Counted from the first letter of the stretch, positions 1-19,028 are shown. The stretch is 64,000 nt of DNA from Mantamonas sphyraenae STR306 (GCA_026936335.1 JAPMXV010000043.1:310001-374000), one strand, 5' to 3'. The notes: generated by a model not told the origin, from the sequence alone. Translations and numbers: made by a program.

Positions 1-3000
1 TAGTCCATCAGTTCCCGGTCTGCATCGGTACGTGCATGACACAGGGAGGGAGGGGGTGGCACATGGGGTGGTGAGTGAATGTGAGTCAAAAGTTGTTTGG
101 GGCCGTCCATCCTGCTGCCCAAGGCAAAACGTACACGAGTCCTGGTAGTTGATGGCCACCAGCGGGTTCTCCCCATCGTCCTGCGGCACAGGCGTCACAT
201 CCTTCCATTCCTCCTGCTCAGAAAGCGGCACGTCCTCGACGTCGGACATGCTGGTGATTTTTTTTGTGATGGATGTGGTGGAGCTGAAAGCACAGGACAA
301 CTTCTTTGGCCATCTGCGGTTGACAGTGGTTGAGGGGATGCCACGTTTGGATGGGAGGTCCACATGGAGCTGCTATGGTCAAAGCCCGACTCAACCCACA
401 CAAAACTCTCATTTTCTCGCACCCGGACGCGAGATGGGCAACGAGCAGTCACAGGTGCATCGCGAGGTGCTCTCCTCTCTGCAGTCCATCACATCCGCCA
501 ACTGGCGAGAAGTGTTGACGTCGTTTGTGGATCGAGTGCCAGCGGATGCGTCCATCGACTGCACCGACAAAAAGGTGCTCACAAAGCTATTTGCCCTGCT
601 CGAAACGCAAGTGGCCCTACGCATGGAGCAAGATGACATCCACGGACTCCCATCCATGCCCTCTGCTTCTGGACCGGCTTCCTCCAGCGGCGGCGCCGAC
701 CCGGAAAGCGTGTTTGATCCGAAAGGGGTCCAGCTCCTTCTGCAGTCGCTCTTCCGCCTCTTTTCCTCGCTGTCCATGTTCAAACTGGCAGCCACCGTGC
801 GTTGGGATCTCCTCAACGACCTCCTTACCTTTTGGGAACACCCCGAGTGAGTGAAATTGCCTGCGTGATTCCTCGGAGGGTTGTGCTTGGACGACGACAA
901 CATCGCTCGTTTTCTCACTGCCGTCTCTCATGCCTGACCTTGGCCTTCTCCCTACCCTTCCCACCCCCTTCCCGCACACAACAGCGTGGTGTGCGACACA
1001 CTGGACCTGATCCATCGGATGGTGCAGTGCAGTTTCGAGCCCAAGGCCAACGAAGAGAGCAAGTGCGACGCAGCCGAGGCGGCCAACAAGTTGGCGTTTG
1101 CCGGCGAGGACCGCCTCAACTCGCTGCTGGCCATGTTCCATGCACACAGCTATGGCAAGAACAGTGTGCTCCTGTGCAAGCTCATGCAACTGTTGGTGTC
1201 GCTTTTCTGCGAGCGGCAGCACACGACTGCGTTTGAGCAGGTGCAGAGCTTGCACAAGATGTTCCTCCCGTACGACACCGTCCTCTACGACCTCACTCGC
1301 CATGCCCACCCGCAGCTGCGCATCCTCTCCACTCGTTTCCTCGTCCAGCTGTTTCTGGAGAGCGATGAGGCCACGTACAGACAGTTGCAGGCGTCGTCTC
1401 TCGCCGCAGGTGTCCTCCTCTGGCACATGTTTTCTGCCTTTGAACCCAGGGCAGGCATGTGGTCGACGCAATCACAGGATAACGATGCTGGGAATGCAGG
1501 AGACGGCAGTGGTGACGTGGCTCAGGCAGAAGCACACAAGGACGACGCTGCGCACAGTGACAAGCACGAACAGACACAGACACAGGGAGAAGGTGTCGCT
1601 GAGGTGGGAGACACCAAGGTGAAGAAGGAACAGACAGAGGTGGTGGAGGTGGATGAGGATGAGGTTGAAGAGGAAGAGGAGGATGATGCCATGGCTTCGT
1701 TGGAACGATCGTCCACAGCGTGGGGATCGGCCCTCACGGTTGCCAACGAGGACAACCCAGAGACAAAGGCCACGGGCCAAGGTGAGAGCACGGCGGCAGG
1801 CGTGAGTGGCACCAATTCATCTGCGTCCAACACACCGAACGCAAGCAGCAGCGGCACGACCAACATTGGCTCCAACACACCGTCGAGCATTGCCACGCCG
1901 TCTCCGCTGCAGGCCACCCTCAGTGGGTCTGAATCGGAGCCAAGCACACCCGTGGGTGGGTTTGAGGGCTGGGAAGTGGTGGATCACCACTCGTTGGATG
2001 GGGAAACCACAGCGACGTCGTCGTCGCTGGCAGCGGGCATTAGCACCAAGCCCATGGCTCTGACTGAGATGCAATTGCTGAGCATCGACCTGATTGGTGT
2101 CATGTGCGACAGCAACGCAGAGGCGTTGGGAGCGCTGGGTCGCATGGTGCCGCACGCTCTGCTGAATCGGTATCCTCCGTCACCCGGACTGGATGCGCGT
2201 GCAGACACACACGAAACGTCGGGGTTGAGCAGTCTGTTTGGGAGTGGGGCCAGCAGCTCTACACACAAGCTGACCAAGGCAGAGGCAAAGACGGCGCTGT
2301 TGAAGGTGAAAAACATGACGATGGATCGTGTGAATTGGCACGCCCTCTTCCTGGACCTTTTGTCGTTGGAGGCCAATCTGCCGCTGTTGCAATGGAACGA
2401 CCGTTGTCGTGCGCAACTGCTGGACGCCCTCAACGCAGAGATTGTGGAGCTGGACGAGCGACGCCGTAGCACCACGCGTCCCATCGATTGGGAACATCGC
2501 GCCATGGTCGTGCACTACCCGGACATCGACAGCAAACTGTGTGTGGACGGCGTGTTTCTGGACGCCCTGTTCAATTTCCACACGCTGCTGGGCCACTGGA
2601 CCTTTGAGGAGGAGTTTGTGGAGCGCAGCAAAGCCGTCATGGACGAGCACCTGGGCCACCTCAGCCCTGCTGTGCTTCTGGAGGAACTCTACCACGCCAG
2701 CGTGGTGCAGGAGTCGTCTGTGTTGCAAATGCGTCTGCTGCAGAGCATGCGTATTGTCTTTGTGTGTGCCATGGACGCAGACGACGAGTCGCAGGTGACC
2801 GATGTTCTCGACGCCGTCCATGTGCCGTACATCCTCCATCTCCTGCGTCCCGGTCGCTTTGATGACACCGTATCCCACTCTCTGCTTCAATTCCTGGCGG
2901 AGCTGTGTCTGCACGAGGAAAAGATGCCGCAGGTGCTTGCACATCGTAGCGGCCTGCAGCACGTGTGTGCCCATCTGGACACCGTACACGCGCACAAGTG

Positions 3001-6000
3001 GCAAGACGGACACAATGCCCTGCAGATGGCCCTCACCTGCATGGAAATCCTGCACGCCGTGGCACAGGAGCCGCTGGGAAAGCGTGCGTTGTGTCGCTTG
3101 CCTTTGCTGCAATCCATCATCCAGGCGCTGTTGCACGAAGACGCACGCATCTTCAAGGCCACTGTCAAGGTGCTGCAAACCCTGCTGGCCAACAGTCCCC
3201 TGGTAGCCCATGCACTGGCCACCACGGGCTTCTTTGAGTTCATTCTGTATGCCCTGTGCAGTGCGGCAACGTCGGAAAAGGCCACGGCCGTACGTGCTGC
3301 GTCGCTGTTGCTCGATGTCCACCAGCTTGGAGGCGCGACGGCCGCCAGTTCCTACCTGTTGCAATACCTCCCGCGTCCGCTGGTGGTGGTGCTGGAGGCA
3401 CAGGGACCCAAGTTGTTTGTGGAGTATCTGCGCAGCGAGGATCTGAAGGCACCCACCATCATTTGGAATGTGGACATGCGAAAACAGCTCAAGACGGCTC
3501 TGAGCGGCATCATTCGTCCATTCAAGGCCACGTTGAGGGAGACGCCGCAGGAACGCTTCGTGTTGGATGTGAGCAACACACCTGCGCTGCACTACGCCAA
3601 TCTGGAGGACGAGCTGTTTGTGGGAGGAATCTACATCAGCTACTTCATCAACAGCGAGAGCAATGACATTTTTGTGGCCGATCCGGAGCTGTTGATTGAG
3701 GAGATCAGCGAGTATCTGACGGCAGTCCAGCCGTCGGCCAAGCTGCTCAAGGCCTTTGCCCTGGCCATGAGCTACTTCTCTGAACTGCCCGCACTGGCCA
3801 CATACAAACACTGGGGTAAGCTGGTGCGCATCTGGAAGGTGTTGAGTGCAGAGCTGTCGGAGCTGGATCAGGATGAAGACGACGACGATGCCACGGCTGT
3901 TCAGGAGCGCAAGCGTGTGCTCGTGAACGAACTCGACGCACTGCTCATGGGCTTTGTGGTCTTGTTTCATGTCGGCGTGGCCAACAAACAGGGCCTCAAT
4001 GTGCATCTGGCACAACGAGGCTCCATGGCCCAATCGGCAGGGAGTGAATCCCCGTCGACCACGCAGGCATCCAGCAGCAGCAGCAGCAGCAGCAGCAGCT
4101 CGTCATCGCCGGCGGTCACCGATTTTGGTGCAATGGATTGCACGCAGAACCAGCAGGCGTTTGTGGAACACGGGGGATTGGAGGCCGTGATGGCCGCGTT
4201 GCCCGAAATCGCGCGTGTGCGTGACGGGGTACGTTTCGATGCACTGAGCAAGGTGATGAGCATGGTGGGTTGCCTGTGTGCACACCAGCCCGAGGCAGCA
4301 GCACGCATTGTGGCCCACCATCCAGAGTTTCTGTCCGCTTGGTGCTTCAAGAGTCTGTCGCTGGGCGTCATCCGCGCAAACACCCGTCTGGGCCTGCAAA
4401 CCATTTGGTGTGTGTCCAACATGTTGCAAGCCCTGGCTGTGCTCCCGGATGCCTACACACCAGCAGCAGCAGCAGCAGCGGCTGGAGGAGGAGGATCGAC
4501 CACGACCAACACGTCCAACACGACCAACACGACCACGGCATCCTCGACCGCGGGCGGCTCCTCCTCATGGCTGGAGCGTGCGGCTGAAATGGTGGTGCGA
4601 TCGGGAGGGTTCATCAAGGTGCTGTTTGTGGCCGTGTTCTACGTGCCGCATGCGGCGTCGGCTGCGACGGCGTTGGAAGAGCTGACCATCATCGAGCACG
4701 CGGTGGTGTCGCTGCGTCTGATGGCAGGAGTCATGCCAGAGCACGATCTGGACAAGTTGCGCATGGGAGGCACTGCAGGACGACGGCTGGAAGGGCAGGG
4801 ATTGGAGTCACCCTCGGGACGGGAACGCACAACATCGCAATTCATGCATGCCGGAGAGGCGGCCCTACAGGCACGTGGTGTGTTTCAGGTGGTGCGTGCG
4901 TTGATTGGAGGATGGTTCCCACACGCGCTGTGCCAATCGTTCTTGGACGACACAGCCATGTCGTTTATGCAACTGGTGCGAGGGACCATGGGCACGCCGT
5001 TGCTCATCTGGAACGACGTGACACGCAAGGAGCTGCGTACCTTTCTCGAGGCACAAATGGCCACGCTGTTGACGCAGGCGCAGCGCGACGCGGTGCAGGC
5101 GCAAGGGGAACCCCTCATGCCCGGCCTGGACGTGATGGAACACTGGCCCGGATGGGAGGCCCCACAGGACGTCACCTTTGTCTACGCCAGTCTCCAGGAC
5201 GAGTTGGAGGTGGAGCACGTGTACGTGTCTGTGTTCAACTCCCAACCCGGGTTTCCCCTGCCCGATCCTGCCGCTCTTCTGCGTGGATGTGTGCGACGCG
5301 TGGCCAACGCGTACGCAACCCAAAGCAAGCCATCCTCATCCTCGTCCTCCTCCACTCCATCCTCGGCCGTTGTCGTGTCCGAGTGCGTGCGTTGCATGGG
5401 CAATGTGCTCACGCACCAGGCGCTGGAACGCAGCGTTCTGGCGCTCGCCTTTGTCCAGGCCGCCAAAGCGCTGAAGGAGGATGTGCAACCGCATCTGGTG
5501 CTGGACAGCAGTCGAAACGACAGTGGAAGCGCAGAAACCCTGCAGTTGCATATGCTGGTCATCTGCGAACGACTCGTCACGGCAGGCAAGGAGGCAAGCG
5601 TGGCGGCCATTCGCATGATGCAAGGGTCGCCCTGGATGCGTCAGTTGCACCGGATGCTCGTGGAAGGTTCGCATGTGGTGAAAACCATGGAGTTGCTGGG
5701 TCTGATGTGCAGCAAGGTGTCGGATGTGGTGCGGCAGGTGCGCGACGAGGGGCTCCTGATCACACTGTTGCGGTTGACAGTGAGCACGTCGTGTGTGGAT
5801 GCCGTGCGTGTGGCGGGCGCACGTGTGTTGGCCATCATGAGCAGTGATCAGGAACACGGGGAATCCGTGACGCAGCTGCTGACGCTGTTGCTGACGTCGC
5901 AGAAGTTCCAGCGGGCGCTGCGAACTGCGTACGAGGAGCCGACGGTGTTGGTGGACATGCTGGACAACCAGTATCGCTATCCGGACTTTGTGTGGAATGA

Positions 6001-14058: not shown

Positions 14059-15206
14059 TCTCGGCGAGACGTGAGGCGTGGGTGGTCGCCGGCATTTCCG
14101 AGCGTGATCCAACCCTCACACCTTCCCCCGCTCCCAACTCAGGTCAACTGGCGTTTTCTTGGTCGCATGCCTCCCAGCACAGAGGAGGAATGGCAGGCTG
14201 AGTTTGACGAGTACAAGCAGTATCCCGAGTGGGACAAGTGAGTGCCTCACCCCCTCACAGTGTGAACCTCCGAAGAGCGCCCGCTCGCTGACACTGCACG
14301 TGTGCGCATGCACATCGTCACAGACTCAACCGAAACATGACTTTGGACGAGTTTAAGCGCATCTTTTGGTACGAGTATGCACACCGGATGCTGGGACGGG
14401 CGATCGGGGCGTACTGGTTGTTGCCCATGGGTGGCTTCTGGGCCGCCGGGTGGTTTGAACACTCGCGGTTCATGAAGCGTCGATCCGCCCTCATTCTGTC
14501 CATGATTGTGGGACAGGGGTTGATTGGATGGTACATGGTCAAGAGTGGCCTGGAGGAGGAACGGTTTGCAGGCAACAACTCTCGCCCCACCGTCAGCCCC
14601 TACCGTCTCGCCTTGCATCTGGGTTCCGCCTTTGTCATTTATGTTACCATGTTGGCCACCTACATGAATGTGGCCCCGTCTCGGGACACCCTCTTCCGTG
14701 CCATGGCCCCCGTCTCCAAGCGCTTGCGCTTCCTGCGTGGTGCCTCCCACGGCCTCATGGGCCTCGTCTACCTCACCGCCATCTCGGGTGCCTTTGTGGC
14801 CGGTCTCGACGCAGGTTTGGTGTACAACGAGTTCCCCTGGATGGGCGAGGGGCTCGTGCCGGAAGACCTGATTGACCCCAATCTGACTCCTGCCTGGCGC
14901 AATCTGTTTGAGAATCACACCACCGCCCAGTTTGACCACCGCTACCTGGGCATCACCACGTACACGGCCATCACCGCACTGTTTCTCTATGCCCGTCGTC
15001 ACTTTGGTGCGCTGCCGCCCGTGATGCGTGCTTCGTTGTGGTCCATGCTGCTCATGGCCAACGTCCAGGTGGGGTTGGGCATCTGGACTCTCCTCGAGTA
15101 TGTTCCTGTGCACTTGGGTGCCATGCATCAGGCTGGCTCCCTCACCCTCCTCTCCGTTGCTGTCTGGCTTGCCAACAACGCCAAGCGCATGCCCCTGGCC
15201 AAGTGA
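13456..15206 (+). CDS. COX15: Heme A synthase COX15 (mitochondrial)
   Basis: GGVTRLTESGLSM | VNWR..EFDEYKQYPE | FKRIFWYEYAHRMLGR, QGLIGWYMVKSGL, VSPYRLALHL, AGLVYNEFPWMG, HQAGSL; introns ~13999-14142 and ~14238-14323; basic N-terminal presequence. Confidence 0.95.
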
Positions 15207-15323
15207 TGTGTGTCTGTGTGTGCATCAATGAAGCGAGAATGAAGAGAGGGAATGTGCTTTTGCATTGCACGACAACGTTGCATTGACAGCACAACGACAC
15301 ACAGACAGACATTTGCTCAACAC

Positions 15324-18114
15324 TCATTGGCGTCCACCCACACCGCTGCCTGCGTCGGTGCTTGCCACCACGCCGCTGGCACTGGCCACGGTGGTCACCT
15401 TGCCAAACTGCGCCTCGTTGGCCGGGTACATGGCATCGATGAGGTCCCCGTAGCGCTGCTGCACAATGCGTCGCTTCATCTTGAGGGTGGGTGTGATTTC
15501 ACCGTCCTCCACGGAAAAGTCCTTGGGCAACAGGCGGAACTGCTTCAGCTGCTCGTACTTGGCCAGCTCCTGGTTGGTGCGCTTAATCACATCCTCCACG
15601 TACGTCTTGACTGCCTCCTCCTTGATGAACGACTCCAGACCTTTGAAGGGCAGACCCAGCCTGCCCGCAAGCGCCTCCGCCTGCTCCGGATCCAGCGTGA
15701 TCAGCGCCACCAGATACTTGCGCTGGTCGCCAATGACACAGGCCTGCGAGATGACAGGATCCAACTTGAGCTTGCCTTCGATGTTCTGCGGCGCCACGTT
15801 CTTGCCACCGGCAGTGACGATGATGTCCTTCAGGCGATCGGTGATCTTCAGGTAGTTCTCGTCCGTCCAGGTGCCCACGTCGCCCGTGTGCAGGTATCCG
15901 GCGGCGTCCACCGTCTCGGCCGTCTTTTCCTCGTTCTTGTAGTAGCCCAGAAAGACGTTGGGGCCTCGGCAGAGGATCTCGCCGTTCTTCGGGTCCAAAC
16001 GCACCTCCACACCGGGCAACGCGGTGCCCACGGTGCCCCCTCGGATGCCGTTGATCGGGTTGGCACTCAGCACACCCGTGGACTCTGTCTGGCCGTACAC
16101 CTCGCGGATGTCCAACCCCATGGCGCCAAAAAAGTTGGCAATCTCACCGGCCAGCGGCGCAGCACCGCTGATCAGCGTTTCGCATCGGTCCAACCCCAAC
16201 GCAGCACGGATCTTGCTGGCCAGAAGTGCGTCAAACAGGGCCCAACGGAAGGCCAGCCAGCCTGTGGGCAGCTGGCCGTTGTTGCGCAGGTCACGCACCT
16301 CTGCGCCGGCCTCCAAGGTCCAGTCGATCAGCTTGCGCTTGATGCCTGTGGCCAGCGCAAACTTGCTCTGCACACCGTCGTAGAACTTCTCCCACAGACG
16401 GGGCACACACAGGAGCACGGTGGGGCGCACCTCGGTGATGTAGTCCTTGACAGCCTTGATGTCGGCAAACTTGACGGTGTTGCCCAGACGGATGGCCACC
16501 AGTTCGCCCTGCAGCCGTTCCGCAATGTGACACAGGGGCAGGAAGGAGAGCGAGATGAGGCCTCCCACGCCGCCCATCATGTCACCCAGGGTGCTTGCCA
16601 TAAACATCAGGTTCTTGTGCGTGTACATGGCTCCCTTGGGCTTGCCTGTGGTGCCACTGGTGTACACCATCATGCAAAACGTGTCCGGCGTCACACTGCG
16701 TGCCATCTTCTCCACCGTGTTGCGCTTCTGTTCGTAGATGTCGTCGCCGGACGTCAGAAAGTCGTCCCAGCCCAGCACGTCATCCGGCAGGTCGTCTCCA
16801 GGCTCCAAACACACCACCAGACTCAGTGCCTTGCCATCTTCATCGCGATCACGCCATCCATCGGTCTTTGCCAGCTGGGCGGCGTTTTCCACAATCAACA
16901 CCTTGGTGTCGCTGTGTTCCACCACATACTGCACGTTTTCGGGCGTCTCGTTGGGGTAGATGCCCACTCCAACACCTCCCAAGCACATGGCTGCCAGGTC
17001 GCAGTACAGCCACTCGGGTCGGTTGCTGCTCAGCACACACACCTTGTCCCCGGGCTCAAACTCAAACGCCTGCAGCGAGCACGCCACACGCGACACCCAC
17101 TCGCCATACTCCATCCACGTGATGTCGTTCCACGTGTCTATGGCACACGCATGGTGTGAGTGATCTCATGGGGTGGCAGTTGGGCCCACGGCGCGGTAAA
17201 GGGCACGCGACACAGAAATGGGGAAATGAAATGCAAACGCCGCGCCAAAACAGGGAAGCGCGTTTGGATGGGTTTCCTCCATCACGTACTGTTCTTCTGC
17301 TTGATGCTGAGTGCTGTCTCCTTGAGACCCAAGTCGTGCACCTGGCGGAAGAACACCTGCAAGATGGTCTTTTCCTGGGTGGCAAGCACAGACTTGGAGG
17401 CCACTGGGGGGGTGAGGGAAAATTGGGGTGTCAGCGAGACGGTGTTCGGGCCCGTATTGCGGCTCACAGGGAGACGGAAGGCAGGAAGCAAATGGGTGAG
17501 GGGTCAGCATGGCAACGTACTGGATCGCTCCTTGGCGAGGAGGGGCGTACGCACGTCTTCAACGTCGATGGCGGCGTCGCCAAGTTGGCGCCAACGATTG
17601 GGCTGAGCACAGAAGAGGAAGAACTGGGCCAGGGCGGCGGCGTAGGACCACACAAACAGCACAAGGGTGGTGGCAAGGGCAGCGGCAGCCTGGCTGTTGG
17701 CCAGCTTGGCGGAGAGGAAGGCAATGGAGCCGACAGTGGTGAAAAGGACGGGCAGCAAGCTGAACGACTGGGCGCCCGTGTACGCGACAATGAGAATGAC
17801 GGCGCGCACAATGGACAGAAGCTGCGGGAGGAAGGGGTCGAGGCAAGCACACACATGGGTGGGTGGGATGATGGAGGGTCGTGTCAGCATGGTTGTGGGA
17901 GGGCGAGCATGTGCAGTGGAGCAGTGCGTACCAAAACGTCTGCGTTCGACGTGGCAAACGAGTACTCGTCAACCTGGGTCCGCAGATACCCGGACAGCTC
18001 TTGGTTCCATCCAACAATCACAAACACAATTAAGGACACAATGACATCGCACAGGGACACAAAGCCCCACACCCATCGACCCTGCTGGGCCATGGATTCT
18101 TTTTGAGCTGCCAT
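15324..18114 (-). CDS. MENTAL (MLN64/STARD3 N-terminal) domain fused to long-chain acyl-CoA synthetase (ANL/AMP-binding), ~803 aa
   Basis: Exons 18114-17932, 17821-17521, 17403-17290 and 17137-15324 join in frame via GT-AG introns. ACSL motifs YTSGTTGKPKG, SFLPLCHIAER, YGQTE, LHTGDVG, RLKDIIVTAGGKNVAP, TPTLKMKR. The N-terminal 4-TM region matches the MENTAL pattern. ACSL identity is near certain; the fusion is inferred. Confidence 0.75.
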
Positions 18115-18567
18115 GTTCGCTCGCAAAGAAGAGTTGGCGAAATCGACGCCGGGGCTGACCGAACGGGATGGACCCAATGAATGCAAATGCTCGTTGCGAT
18201 TCTTCCCTCTGCGTGGGCATGTGTGAAGGTCGGTGAAAACCGTGGTAGGGACAGGAATGTCCCCGGGGGGGGGGGGGGGGGAAGGCAACGAGAATCGACG
18301 CACGAAGGACCTTGCATGACCACGTCAGCTCTATGACCACCCGATTATGTGCAGGGCCGGGAAACGGCAGCACTATTGGAATGGAACACGTCGAGTTGGA
18401 CGCACTGTGAAGCAAATGGTCTGCTGAAAACCTTTGATCCAATTCCCCGATCCTGGACAGCGAGTCGAGCACACAGCCACCTCCTACATGCGCGTTCTTG
18501 CTCCTGGGCTGGTTGTTGGGTCGATTGTATGATGCAGAATTCATTGGGGTCTAGCTTTCAATGGGTT

Positions 18568-19028
18568 TCATTGGCTGCTTGAGGAAGACGCAGACGCAGC
18601 AGAAATGGAGGAGGAAGAGGAGGAGACAGAGACGGGTGTGCTGTCGTCGTTTGCAAGAGTGGCGTCGTCGACAGAGGGAGGGCTGGGATCGTGGTCGATG
18701 ATGTCTCGTGTGGGCCCATCGAGACCCCGCTCGTCGACCGGCCGGGGAACACCGTCACGAGGCAACCATCGTCCATCCTGAAACACAAGGCCGTGCTTGT
18801 CACCGTATTCTTTCATGAGAGTACGCACACTGAGAGGGCGCATGTCGGTCCACTCCTTCTCGATGTAGTCAAGGCAGTCGTCTTTGGTACCTCTCACGCC
18901 AACCTCCTTCCACCCCGATGGGATGCCGTCCCCCACCATTCACCCCAAATGGAGTATTGCAACTCGTCGTTGATCACCACTGTAAACTCCTGGTGCTCGT
19001 CCGGGTTGTATTCGTCGTCACTATCCAT
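18568..19028 (-). CDS. MbtH-like protein with acidic/Ser-rich C-terminal extension (1-nt frameshift at G5 run)
   Basis: FTVVINDELQYSIW in one frame and IPSGWKEVGVRGTKDDCLDYIEKEWTDMRPLSVR in the next match the MbtH signature NxExQxSxWP..PxGW..L..I..WTDMRP. One extra G at 18930-18934 restores a 153-aa ORF. Confidence 0.85.

What the first reader, a model, noticed from the sequence alone, without database searches (positions are those of the whole stretch)
15324..18114. MENTAL (cholesterol-binding 4-TM) domain spliced in frame to a long-chain acyl-CoA synthetase
The MENTAL-like ORF ends ...GAG CGA TCC A|GTACGT. Intron 17520-17404 has a GTACGT donor (used elsewhere in this window), a GCTGAC branch-like site and a CCAG acceptor. 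Its removal gives TCC ATG GCC TCC AAG, continuing in frame into the ACSL N-terminus. The four exons total 2412 nt (803 aa plus stop). The ACSL has no upstream in-frame ATG of its own before 17114. MENTAL is known in STARD3 (with START) and STARD3NL (alone), at late-endosome/ER contacts; I know of no MENTAL-ACSL architecture. Inference: an endosome/phagosome-anchored fatty-acid activating enzyme that could couple sterol sensing to acyl-CoA production.
Basis: partly seen in the sequence, partly recalled or inferred. Interest (0 to 1): 0.8.

Follow-up and report, generated by a model that had tools for sequence, protein, structure and literature searches.

The report
MENTAL membrane domain fused to acyl-CoA synthetase
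A protist gene (very probably Mantamonas sphyraenae) joins the four-helix MENTAL membrane anchor, known from the animal endosomal sterol proteins STARD3 and STARD3NL, to a complete bacterial-type fatty-acid-activating enzyme, and a sister species transcribes the same fusion.

Summary
On the minus strand, four exons (18114-17932, 17821-17521, 17403-17290, 17137-15324) joined by three GTACG-donor introns give one 2412-nt reading frame of 803 codons.

Exons 1-2 encode four hydrophobic helices. Exon 2 alone hits Pfam MENTAL just under the cut-off. Exons 3-4 encode a complete long-chain acyl-CoA synthetase with all catalytic motifs.

- **Transcript support.** A Trinity transcript ORF from Mantamonas plastica (P0121, 800 aa) carries MENTAL (46 bits, cut-off 22), AMP-binding and AMP-binding_C_3 in one frame. 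It aligns colinearly to all four exons, and its linker has the same length (32 residues).
- **Shared intron.** Intron 1 sits at the same position and phase as an intron in a MENTAL+START (STARD3-like) paralogue of the same genome.
- **RNA from this organism.** No RNA run was listed, so the junction could not be read directly.
- **Rarity.** No other MENTAL-synthetase fusion appeared in the searches or the paper library.
- **Origin.** The nearest non-Mantamonas relatives of the synthetase are ~600-aa metagenome proteins and Galdieria.

The proposed function is inference only: activation of fatty acids at an endolysosomal or phagosomal membrane. I rate this a new variant of known kinds.

The parts
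17932..18114 (-). Exon 1 (61 codons): short basic N-terminus, first hydrophobic helix, and the loop ending ..EYSFATSNADVL
   Evidence: Translation. Hydrophobic segment at residues 13-38. 46% identical to P0121 residues 17-70, with the alignment ending exactly at the donor.
17822..17931 (-). Intron 1, 110 nt, GTACGC..CAG, phase 0
   Evidence: Same position and phase as the intron in the MENTAL+START paralogue on contig C12 (..TSLFDVA|CLAFVR against ..TSNADVL|LLSIVR).
17521..17821 (-). Exon 2 (100 codons plus 1 nt): helices 2-4 of the MENTAL domain and the first part of the linker (..QPNRWRQLGDAAIDVEDVRTPLLAKERS)
   Evidence: Pfam MENTAL 19.5 bits, E 9e-4, model positions 55-126. Three hydrophobic segments. 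Aligned to P0121 from residue 72 through its linker, in one tblastn segment that also covers exon 3.
17404..17520 (-). Intron 2, 117 nt, GTACGT donor, GCTGAC branch-like site, CCCCCCAG acceptor. It splits the codon A|TG and holds one in-frame TGA at 17506-17504.
   Evidence: Removing it gives a 32-residue linker, as in P0121.
17290..17403 (-). Exon 3 (114 nt): N-terminus of the synthetase (ASKSVLATQEKTILQVFFRQVHDLGLKETALSIKQKN)
   Evidence: Matches the N-terminus of the ~600-aa relatives (P0003 starts MPQAHTLLQKFYDQVHRFG..) and P0121.
17138..17289 (-). Intron 3, 152 nt, GTACGT..TAG, splits the codon A|AC
   Evidence: The P0121 alignment resumes at 17135.
15324..17137 (-). Exon 4 (603 codons plus stop): AMP-binding domain (about 17132-15939) and AMP-binding_C_3 (about 15827-15420)
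   Evidence: Pfam 218 and 45.8 bits. 68% identical to P0121 residues 209-799. Best NCBIfam match is FadD11, full length, 379 bits, below its cut-off. All columns invariant among 15 relatives are kept.

Best explanation
This is one nuclear gene of a Mantamonas genome, with assembly statistics matching M. sphyraenae. It encodes an 803-residue membrane-anchored fatty acyl-CoA synthetase.

Shown:
- Exons 1-2 encode a four-helix MENTAL domain.
- A 32-residue linker follows.
- Exons 3-4 encode a complete FadD11/FadD15-type long-chain fatty-acid--CoA ligase.
- The same single reading frame is present in a transcript of M. plastica.

Inferred:
- By the positive-inside rule and by analogy with STARD3, both ends of the four-helix bundle face the cytosol. 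The enzyme would then sit on the cytosolic face of the membrane that holds the anchor.
- That membrane is most likely an endolysosome or phagolysosome of this bacterivore. There the enzyme would convert free fatty acids leaving the digestive compartment into acyl-CoA (vectorial acylation).
- I put this location and role at about 45%. I put any regulation by sterol bound to the MENTAL domain at about 20%.
- The gene most likely arose when a synthetase of a lineage otherwise seen in ~600-aa metagenome proteins and Galdieria was joined downstream of an old MENTAL paralogue. The synthetase's own start codon region became the linker.
For: - **Frame and splice sites.** They are as described.
- **Orthologue.** P0121 is an 800-aa ORF from an M. 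plastica Trinity transcript. It carries MENTAL at 46 bits (50 bits on residues 1-200), AMP-binding at 236 bits and AMP-binding_C_3 at 48 bits.
- **Colinearity.** tblastn of P0121 on the window hits exon 1 (46%), exons 2-3 (41% over one gapped segment that spans intron 2) and exon 4 (68%), in order and ending at the predicted splice sites.
- **Linker.** It is 32 residues in both species.
- **Helices.** There are four hydrophobic segments in both species.
- **Shared intron.** Intron 1 is shared in position and phase with the MENTAL+START gene on contig C12.
- **No independent start.** The synthetase has no ATG of its own before 17114, yet exon 3 matches the N-terminus of full-length relatives.
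- **Catalytic residues.** The columns invariant among relatives are intact, including the YTSGTTGxPKG loop, YGQTE, TGD, DRxKD and the C-terminal lysine.
- **Charge pattern.** The N-terminus holds 2 K/R against 1 D/E. The first loop holds 1 K/R against 4 D/E.
- **MENTAL functions in animals.** Endosome anchoring, exposure of the C-terminal domain to the cytosol, oligomerisation and cholesterol binding are described in PMC5430228.
- **Organism.** G000 has 25,061,354 bases in 78 contigs. The M. sphyraenae FALCON assembly has 25.06 Mb in 78 contigs.
Against: - No RNA run of this organism was listed, so the 17521/17403 junction was not seen directly.
- On the window itself MENTAL is sub-threshold exon by exon: exon 2 scores 19.5 bits against a cut-off of 22, and exon 1 gives no hit. 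Membership rests on the orthologue.
- The Pfam match covers only model positions 1-128 of 176. The part that carries the FFAT motif in STARD3 is missing.
- The window linker has no aromatic FFAT-like core.
- Trinity can build chimeric contigs, and a second M. plastica isoform gives only a 480-aa ORF.
- No data exist on where a MENTAL domain localises outside animals.
- The MENTAL part is very diverged from the two STARD3-like paralogues: 28% over 71 residues for P0121, and nothing for window exon 2.
Confidence: 0.8

Rival explanations
1. These are two separate genes. One is a small MENTAL-only protein ending at the TGA at 17504 (STARD3NL-like, 166 residues). The other is an independent synthetase. 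On this view the M. plastica 800-aa ORF is a read-through or assembly chimera.
For: - The unspliced frame stops five codons after exon 2.
- MENTAL-only proteins exist in animals (STARD3NL; PMC5430228).
- Trinity gives several isoforms for this M. plastica gene.
- No RNA run was available for this organism.
Against: - The synthetase has no ATG for its conserved N-terminal exon. The only way to an ATG is the splice itself, or an unsupported 64-nt GTGAGC intron from the ATG at 17510 (read).
- Both species keep one open frame across a poorly conserved linker of identical length.
- All five frame-keeping splice options still give a fusion.
Confidence: 0.07
2. One gene gives two products. Splicing of intron 2 gives the MENTAL-synthetase fusion. 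Retention of intron 2 gives a MENTAL-only protein, so the intron acts as a switch between an anchor/oligomerisation partner and the anchored enzyme.
For: - Intron 2 is a multiple of three (117 nt) and holds a single in-frame stop, TGA 17506-17504.
- In animals STARD3 and STARD3NL form mixed oligomers through MENTAL (PMC5430228).
Against: - No expression data are available.
- Nothing in the sequence marks the intron as regulated. Its donor, branch-like site and acceptor look like those of the two neighbouring introns.
Confidence: 0.2
3. The fusion is real, but the four-helix part serves only as a generic membrane anchor, for example in the ER. This would resemble the N-terminal anchors of animal ACSL and FATP enzymes, with no sterol binding and no endolysosomal address.
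For: - The match to MENTAL lacks the last 48 model positions.
- The window protein has no FFAT-like motif.
- The domain is far from the STARD3-like paralogues of the same genome.
- N-terminal membrane anchors are usual in eukaryotic long-chain acyl-CoA synthetases (established knowledge).
Against: - The luminal-loop motif and the helices are conserved between the two Mantamonas species.
- The Pfam score of the orthologue is well above the cut-off.
- TPLL after helix 4 is conserved between the two species, and the C12 paralogue has a similar ERTPLI. This hints at a shared sorting or interaction signal.
Confidence: 0.35

Closest known systems
STARD3 (MLN64), animal late-endosomal sterol transfer protein
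   Same: An N-terminal four-helix MENTAL domain is followed by a cytosolic lipid-handling domain. Mantamonas itself has two such MENTAL+START genes, and one of them shares the intron position.
   Different: The C-terminal domain here is an adenylate-forming fatty-acid--CoA ligase, not a START domain. The window protein has no FFAT-like motif. The Pfam match stops at model position 128 of 176.
STARD3NL (MENTHO), MENTAL-only protein
   Same: It carries the MENTAL domain. The product of the unspliced frame (stop at 17504) would have this layout.
   Different: The spliced gene continues into a 640-residue enzyme. A MENTAL-only product is not shown.
Bacterial FadD11/FadD15-type long-chain fatty-acid--CoA ligases (~600 aa, PF00501 + PF23562)
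   Same: Full-length similarity: 51-57% identity to unnamed metagenome proteins, 36-44% to many bacterial phyla, and FadD11 as the best NCBIfam model. The N-terminus and catalytic motifs are the same.
   Different: These proteins are soluble single-domain enzymes without a membrane domain and without introns. Here the former start region has become a linker.
Animal ACSL1/3/4/5/6 and FATP (SLC27) enzymes
   Same: A fatty-acid-activating enzyme is tethered to a membrane by an N-terminal hydrophobic region, with the catalytic domain in the cytosol (established knowledge).
   Different: Those anchors are one or two helices unrelated to MENTAL. The Mantamonas paralogues of the synthetase in the same genome are at most 36% identical to it.
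Galdieria long-chain acyl-CoA synthetases (P0019, P0020; 723-728 aa)
   Same: They fall in the same clade as the Mantamonas synthetase in the tree and are 44-45% identical to it.
   Different: Their N-terminal extensions are hydrophilic and carry no MENTAL domain.

Membership tests
MENTAL domain (Pfam PF10457) | Match to the family profile above the curated cut-off (22 bits) | tested here: inconclusive
On the window, exon by exon: exon 2 scores 19.5 bits, E 9e-4, in register (model positions 55-126), and exon 1 gives no hit. The orthologue P0121 meets it at 46-50 bits, E 6e-12 to 4e-13.
MENTAL domain (Pfam PF10457) | Four transmembrane helices | tested here: met
   Kyte-Doolittle scan: one segment in exon 1 and three in exon 2. 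P0121 shows the same four.
MENTAL domain (Pfam PF10457) | Common descent with the MENTAL of STARD3-type genes | tested here: met
   The phase-0 intron is at the same residue position as in the MENTAL+START gene on contig C12. P0121 against that paralogue: 28% over 71 residues, E 6e-5.
MENTAL domain (Pfam PF10457) | FFAT or FFAT-like motif at the C-terminal end (as in STARD3/STARD3NL) | tested here: not met
   Read by eye. The window linker QLGDAAIDVEDVRTPLLAKERS has no F or Y. M. plastica has DDDEFDDDET, a possible weak FFAT-like stretch. The feature is not conserved between the two.
MENTAL domain (Pfam PF10457) | Cholesterol binding, oligomerisation, late-endosome localisation | not testable with these tools
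   Known for the human proteins only (PMC5430228).
Long-chain fatty-acid--CoA ligase (ANL superfamily, PF00501 + PF23562) | AMP-binding domain and C-terminal domain above the cut-offs | tested here: met
   218 bits (cut-off 29.9) and 45.8 bits (cut-off 20.8) on exon 4.
Long-chain fatty-acid--CoA ligase (ANL superfamily, PF00501 + PF23562) | Catalytic motifs: YTSGTTGxPKG loop, YGQTE, TGD, DRxKD, C-terminal lysine | tested here: met
   All lie in columns that are invariant among 15 relatives including the window protein: Y158-G168, Y347-E351, T417-D419, D433-D437, K552.
Long-chain fatty-acid--CoA ligase (ANL superfamily, PF00501 + PF23562) | Membership of a named equivalog (FadD11 and others) | tested here: not met
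   The best match is FadD11 at 379 bits against a cut-off of 950. No NCBIfam model is reached. The family is clear, but the exact subfamily and chain-length preference are open.
Long-chain fatty-acid--CoA ligase (ANL superfamily, PF00501 + PF23562) | Acyl-CoA synthetase activity on long-chain fatty acids | not testable with these tools
   Needs an enzyme assay or complementation.

The most novel reading that the evidence does not exclude
MENTAL is an ancient, modular endolysosomal anchor that eukaryotes outside animals have coupled to different lipid-handling domains. In Mantamonas it carries a synthetase, acquired from bacteria, on the cytosolic face of phagolysosomes. There the enzyme traps fatty acids released from digested prey as acyl-CoA, and its activity or clustering responds to sterol bound in the MENTAL bundle.
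Probability: 0.2. Interest if true: 0.7.

Novelty: new variant of a known kind. Interest (0 to 1): 0.55.

Why it matters
- **Scope of the domain.** In the papers read here (PMC5430228) the MENTAL domain is described only in STARD3, with START, and in STARD3NL, alone. A fusion to an enzyme, supported by a transcript, would show that the domain is a reusable membrane address or sterol-binding module and not just part of one sterol-transfer machine.
- **Age of the domain.** The fusion places the domain, with three paralogues, in CRuMs, a lineage that branches at the base of Amorphea. This pushes its origin well before animals.
- **A testable question.** It gives a natural construct for asking what MENTAL does by itself (targeting, oligomerisation, sterol binding), with an easily assayed enzyme as read-out.
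- **A mixed-ancestry gene.** It is a candidate case of a bacterial-type enzyme captured by a eukaryotic membrane domain.

Tried and rejected
- **RNA evidence.** The look-up of sequencing runs listed no run for 15200-18400, so read laying could not be used.
- **Whole-library HMMER search with exon 2**. It gave three weak multi-stretch hits to unrelated long proteins and no relatives. P0121 was not returned either; it is not the representative of its 90% cluster. The blank therefore says little.
- **Word search with P0121 residues 1-175**. No hit among proteins of 440-1400 aa.
- **Atlas look-alikes.** The N-terminal part gave MENTAL clusters of plants at a score of only 0.78, a lead and no more. 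The whole protein gave only synthetase clusters, none with both families.
- **Genome scan with the single protein**. It found nothing. With an alignment it found 600 or more bacterial loci at 36-44% identity, none closer.
- **Context of two near relatives**. Intron-less genes on marine metagenome scaffolds with FGE-sulfatase, FlgD_ig and Metallophos neighbours. This looks bacterial but is not proven.
- **MbtH next to the relatives.** The 90-aa ORF upstream of P0005 has no MbtH match. This does not support a transferred MbtH-plus-ligase block.
- **Alternative independent start.** The ATG at 17510 with a GTGAGC donor at 17467 and a 64-nt intron would be in frame. I rejected it because it has no homology support, the intron is much shorter than the three neighbouring ones, and the start would lie inside the upstream coding region.
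- **Joined 803-residue protein.** Exons were searched by reference, and P0121 served as the full-length proxy. Local scripts joined exon 2/3 candidates only to test frame and stops.
- **Structure prediction.** Left out. To my knowledge no solved MENTAL structure exists to compare with, and the alignment would be only two to four sequences deep.

Full report
**Where we are.** The window is contig C43:310001-374000 of an assembly of 25,061,354 bases in 78 contigs. These figures match the FALCON assembly of Mantamonas sphyraenae: 25.06 Mb, 78 primary contigs, 59% G+C (PMC10492846). The closest protein in the public collection comes from Mantamonas plastica. I therefore take the organism to be M. 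sphyraenae, a small bacterivorous gliding flagellate of the CRuMs group.

**The observation.** Read on the minus strand, the gene has four exons.

| Feature | Coordinates | Length | Notes |
|---|---|---|---|
| Exon 1 | 18114-17932 | 183 nt | ATG at 18114 |
| Intron 1 | 17931-17822 | 110 nt | GTACGC..CAG, phase 0 |
| Exon 2 | 17821-17521 | 301 nt | ends ..TCC A |
| Intron 2 | 17520-17404 | 117 nt | GTACGT, GCTGAC, CCCCCCAG |
| Exon 3 | 17403-17290 | 114 nt | |
| Intron 3 | 17289-17138 | 152 nt | GTACGT..TAG |
| Exon 4 | 17137-15324 | 1814 nt | includes the stop |

The total is 2412 nt. All three donors start GTACG. The codons split by introns 2 and 3 read ATG and AAC.

The synthetase frame has no ATG upstream of 17114. 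Yet exon 3 (..TQEKTILQVFFRQVHDLGLKETALSIKQKN) matches the very N-terminus of full-length ~600-aa relatives such as P0003 (MPQAHTLLQKFYDQVHRFG..). Exon 3 is therefore coding and needs a start from further upstream.

I listed every GT..AG pair that spans the in-frame stop at 17506-17504 and keeps the frame. There are five, and all of them give a fusion. Only 17520/17404 has a strong donor and acceptor and also keeps the TPLL motif shared with the orthologue.

**Is the fusion transcribed?** No RNA run was listed for this stretch, so the junction could not be read in this organism. The decisive evidence came from the cluster of the best hit of the exon-4 search.

- The 480-aa hit P0001 shares its 90% cluster with P0121, an 800-aa ORF from another isoform of the same Trinity gene of M. 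plastica.
- P0121 carries MENTAL (46 bits; 50 bits on residues 1-200; cut-off 22), AMP-binding (236 bits) and AMP-binding_C_3 (48 bits) in one frame.
- tblastn of P0121 on the window gives three colinear segments. Residues 17-70 fall on exon 1 and end exactly at the donor. Residues 72-209 cover exons 2 and 3, with a gap over intron 2. Residues 209-799 cover exon 4 at 68% identity.
- The poorly conserved linker between NRWR and EKTILQ is 32 residues long both in P0121 and in the spliced window model.

A chimeric assembly of two neighbouring genes would not be expected to keep one open frame of the same length in two species. I put the fusion at about 0.9.

**Is the N-terminal part a MENTAL domain?**

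- Exon by exon the window is just under the cut-off. Exon 2 scores 19.5 bits, E 9e-4, at model positions 55-126, and exon 1 gives no hit.
- The joined protein was not searched. Membership therefore rests on the orthologue's clear score.
- Four hydrophobic segments are present in both species.
- The genome holds two STARD3-like genes: MENTAL plus two START domains on contig C12, and MENTAL plus START on C69.
- In the C12 gene a phase-0 intron lies at ..TSLFDVA|CLAFVR. This is the same position and phase as intron 1 here (..TSNADVL|LLSIVR).
- Outside this, the three MENTAL domains are far apart, so the fusion partner is an old paralogue and not a recent copy.

**The enzyme part.**

- Exon 4 has full AMP-binding and C-terminal domains.
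- Its best NCBIfam model is FadD11 over the full length, below the cut-off.
- It keeps every column that is invariant among 15 relatives, including the phosphate loop, YGQTE, TGD, DRxKD and the C-terminal lysine. It looks active.
- Paralogues in the same genome are at most 36% identical.
- The nearest relatives outside Mantamonas are unnamed ~600-aa metagenome proteins at 51-57% identity and Galdieria at 44-45%.
- In a quick, unrooted tree the Mantamonas pair sits inside a well-supported clade of these sequences (SH-aLRT 99).
- Two of the relatives lie on marine metagenome scaffolds among intron-less, bacterial-looking genes.
- The family is spread over many bacterial phyla at 36-44% identity.
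- Acquisition from bacteria is therefore plausible, at perhaps 50%, but it is neither rooted nor proven.

**How it most likely works.**

- What is shown is a four-helix anchor, a 32-residue linker, and an intact fatty-acid--CoA ligase.
- The rest is inferred. With four helices both ends lie on one side of the membrane. The charge pattern and the STARD3 precedent put them in the cytosol.
- In animals MENTAL anchors STARD3 in late endosomes, binds cholesterol and oligomerises (PMC5430228).
- In a cell that lives by digesting bacteria, an acyl-CoA synthetase on the phagolysosome surface would trap exported fatty acids as acyl-CoA.
- I hold this location and role at about 45%, and sterol control at about 20%.
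- The FFAT motif that lets STARD3 bind the ER is not present in the window linker. M. plastica has only a weak candidate, DDDEFDDDET. ER tethering is therefore not supported.

**Rivals.**

- Two separate genes: 0.07.
- One gene with a MENTAL-only product by retention of intron 2, which holds a single in-frame TGA: 0.2, and compatible with the main reading.
- A generic anchor without MENTAL-type function: 0.35.

**Novelty.**

- None of the 120 best synthetase relatives of 332-1055 aa carries PF10457.
- The region-limited word search found nothing.
- The Atlas showed no cluster with both families.
- The only paper that holds both terms is an unrelated review.
- These blanks have limits. The word search is weak for diverged membrane domains, and the whole-library search with exon 2 alone was uninformative.
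- I rate the finding a new domain architecture built from two known domains, so far specific to Mantamonas.

Noticed in passing
window 18568-19028, minus strand: An MbtH-like gene lies directly upstream on the same strand and is split by an intron. Both halves hit PF03621 at about 28 bits (cut-off 27). MbtH-like proteins are partners of bacterial adenylation domains and are unusual in eukaryotes. A 90-aa ORF upstream of the bacterial-looking relative P0005 has no MbtH match, which does not support a co-transferred block.
   Followed up: partly
L004 (G000:C12:24300-30300), ORF 828-4139 plus upstream exon ending at 823: A STARD3-like gene with a MENTAL domain and two START domains in one 1103-codon open frame. 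It also holds long low-complexity His/Gln/Ser-Arg stretches. A double START after MENTAL is itself an unusual layout.
   Followed up: partly
L005 (G000:C69:26600-31600), about 1500-3784: A second STARD3-like gene: MENTAL (model positions 1-74 and 80-126 on two exons) followed by one START domain. It lacks the intron position shared by the other two MENTAL genes.
   Followed up: partly
window 18262-18281, minus strand: A run of about 18 C (G on the plus strand) lies about 150 nt upstream of the start codon at 18114, in the 450-nt spacer between the MbtH-like gene and this gene. It may be a promoter-region feature.
   Followed up: no
window 14337-15206, plus strand: A convergent neighbour whose ORF (..FWYEYAHRMLGR..) looks like a haem A synthase (COX15) exon. 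It ends about 120 nt from the stop of the synthetase gene. Identified by eye only.
   Followed up: no
P0001 / P0121 (M. plastica Trinity gene DN1967): Two isoforms of the orthologous transcript give ORFs of 480 and 800 aa. The shorter starts at an internal Met of the enzyme. This could reflect a retained intron or a partial assembly.
   Followed up: no
P0002-P0016, P0017-P0020, P0028 (tree): The Mantamonas synthetase groups with unnamed marine metagenome proteins and with Galdieria enzymes, not with its own genomic paralogues (36% identity or less). This may reflect one or more transfers between bacteria and eukaryotes.
   Followed up: partly
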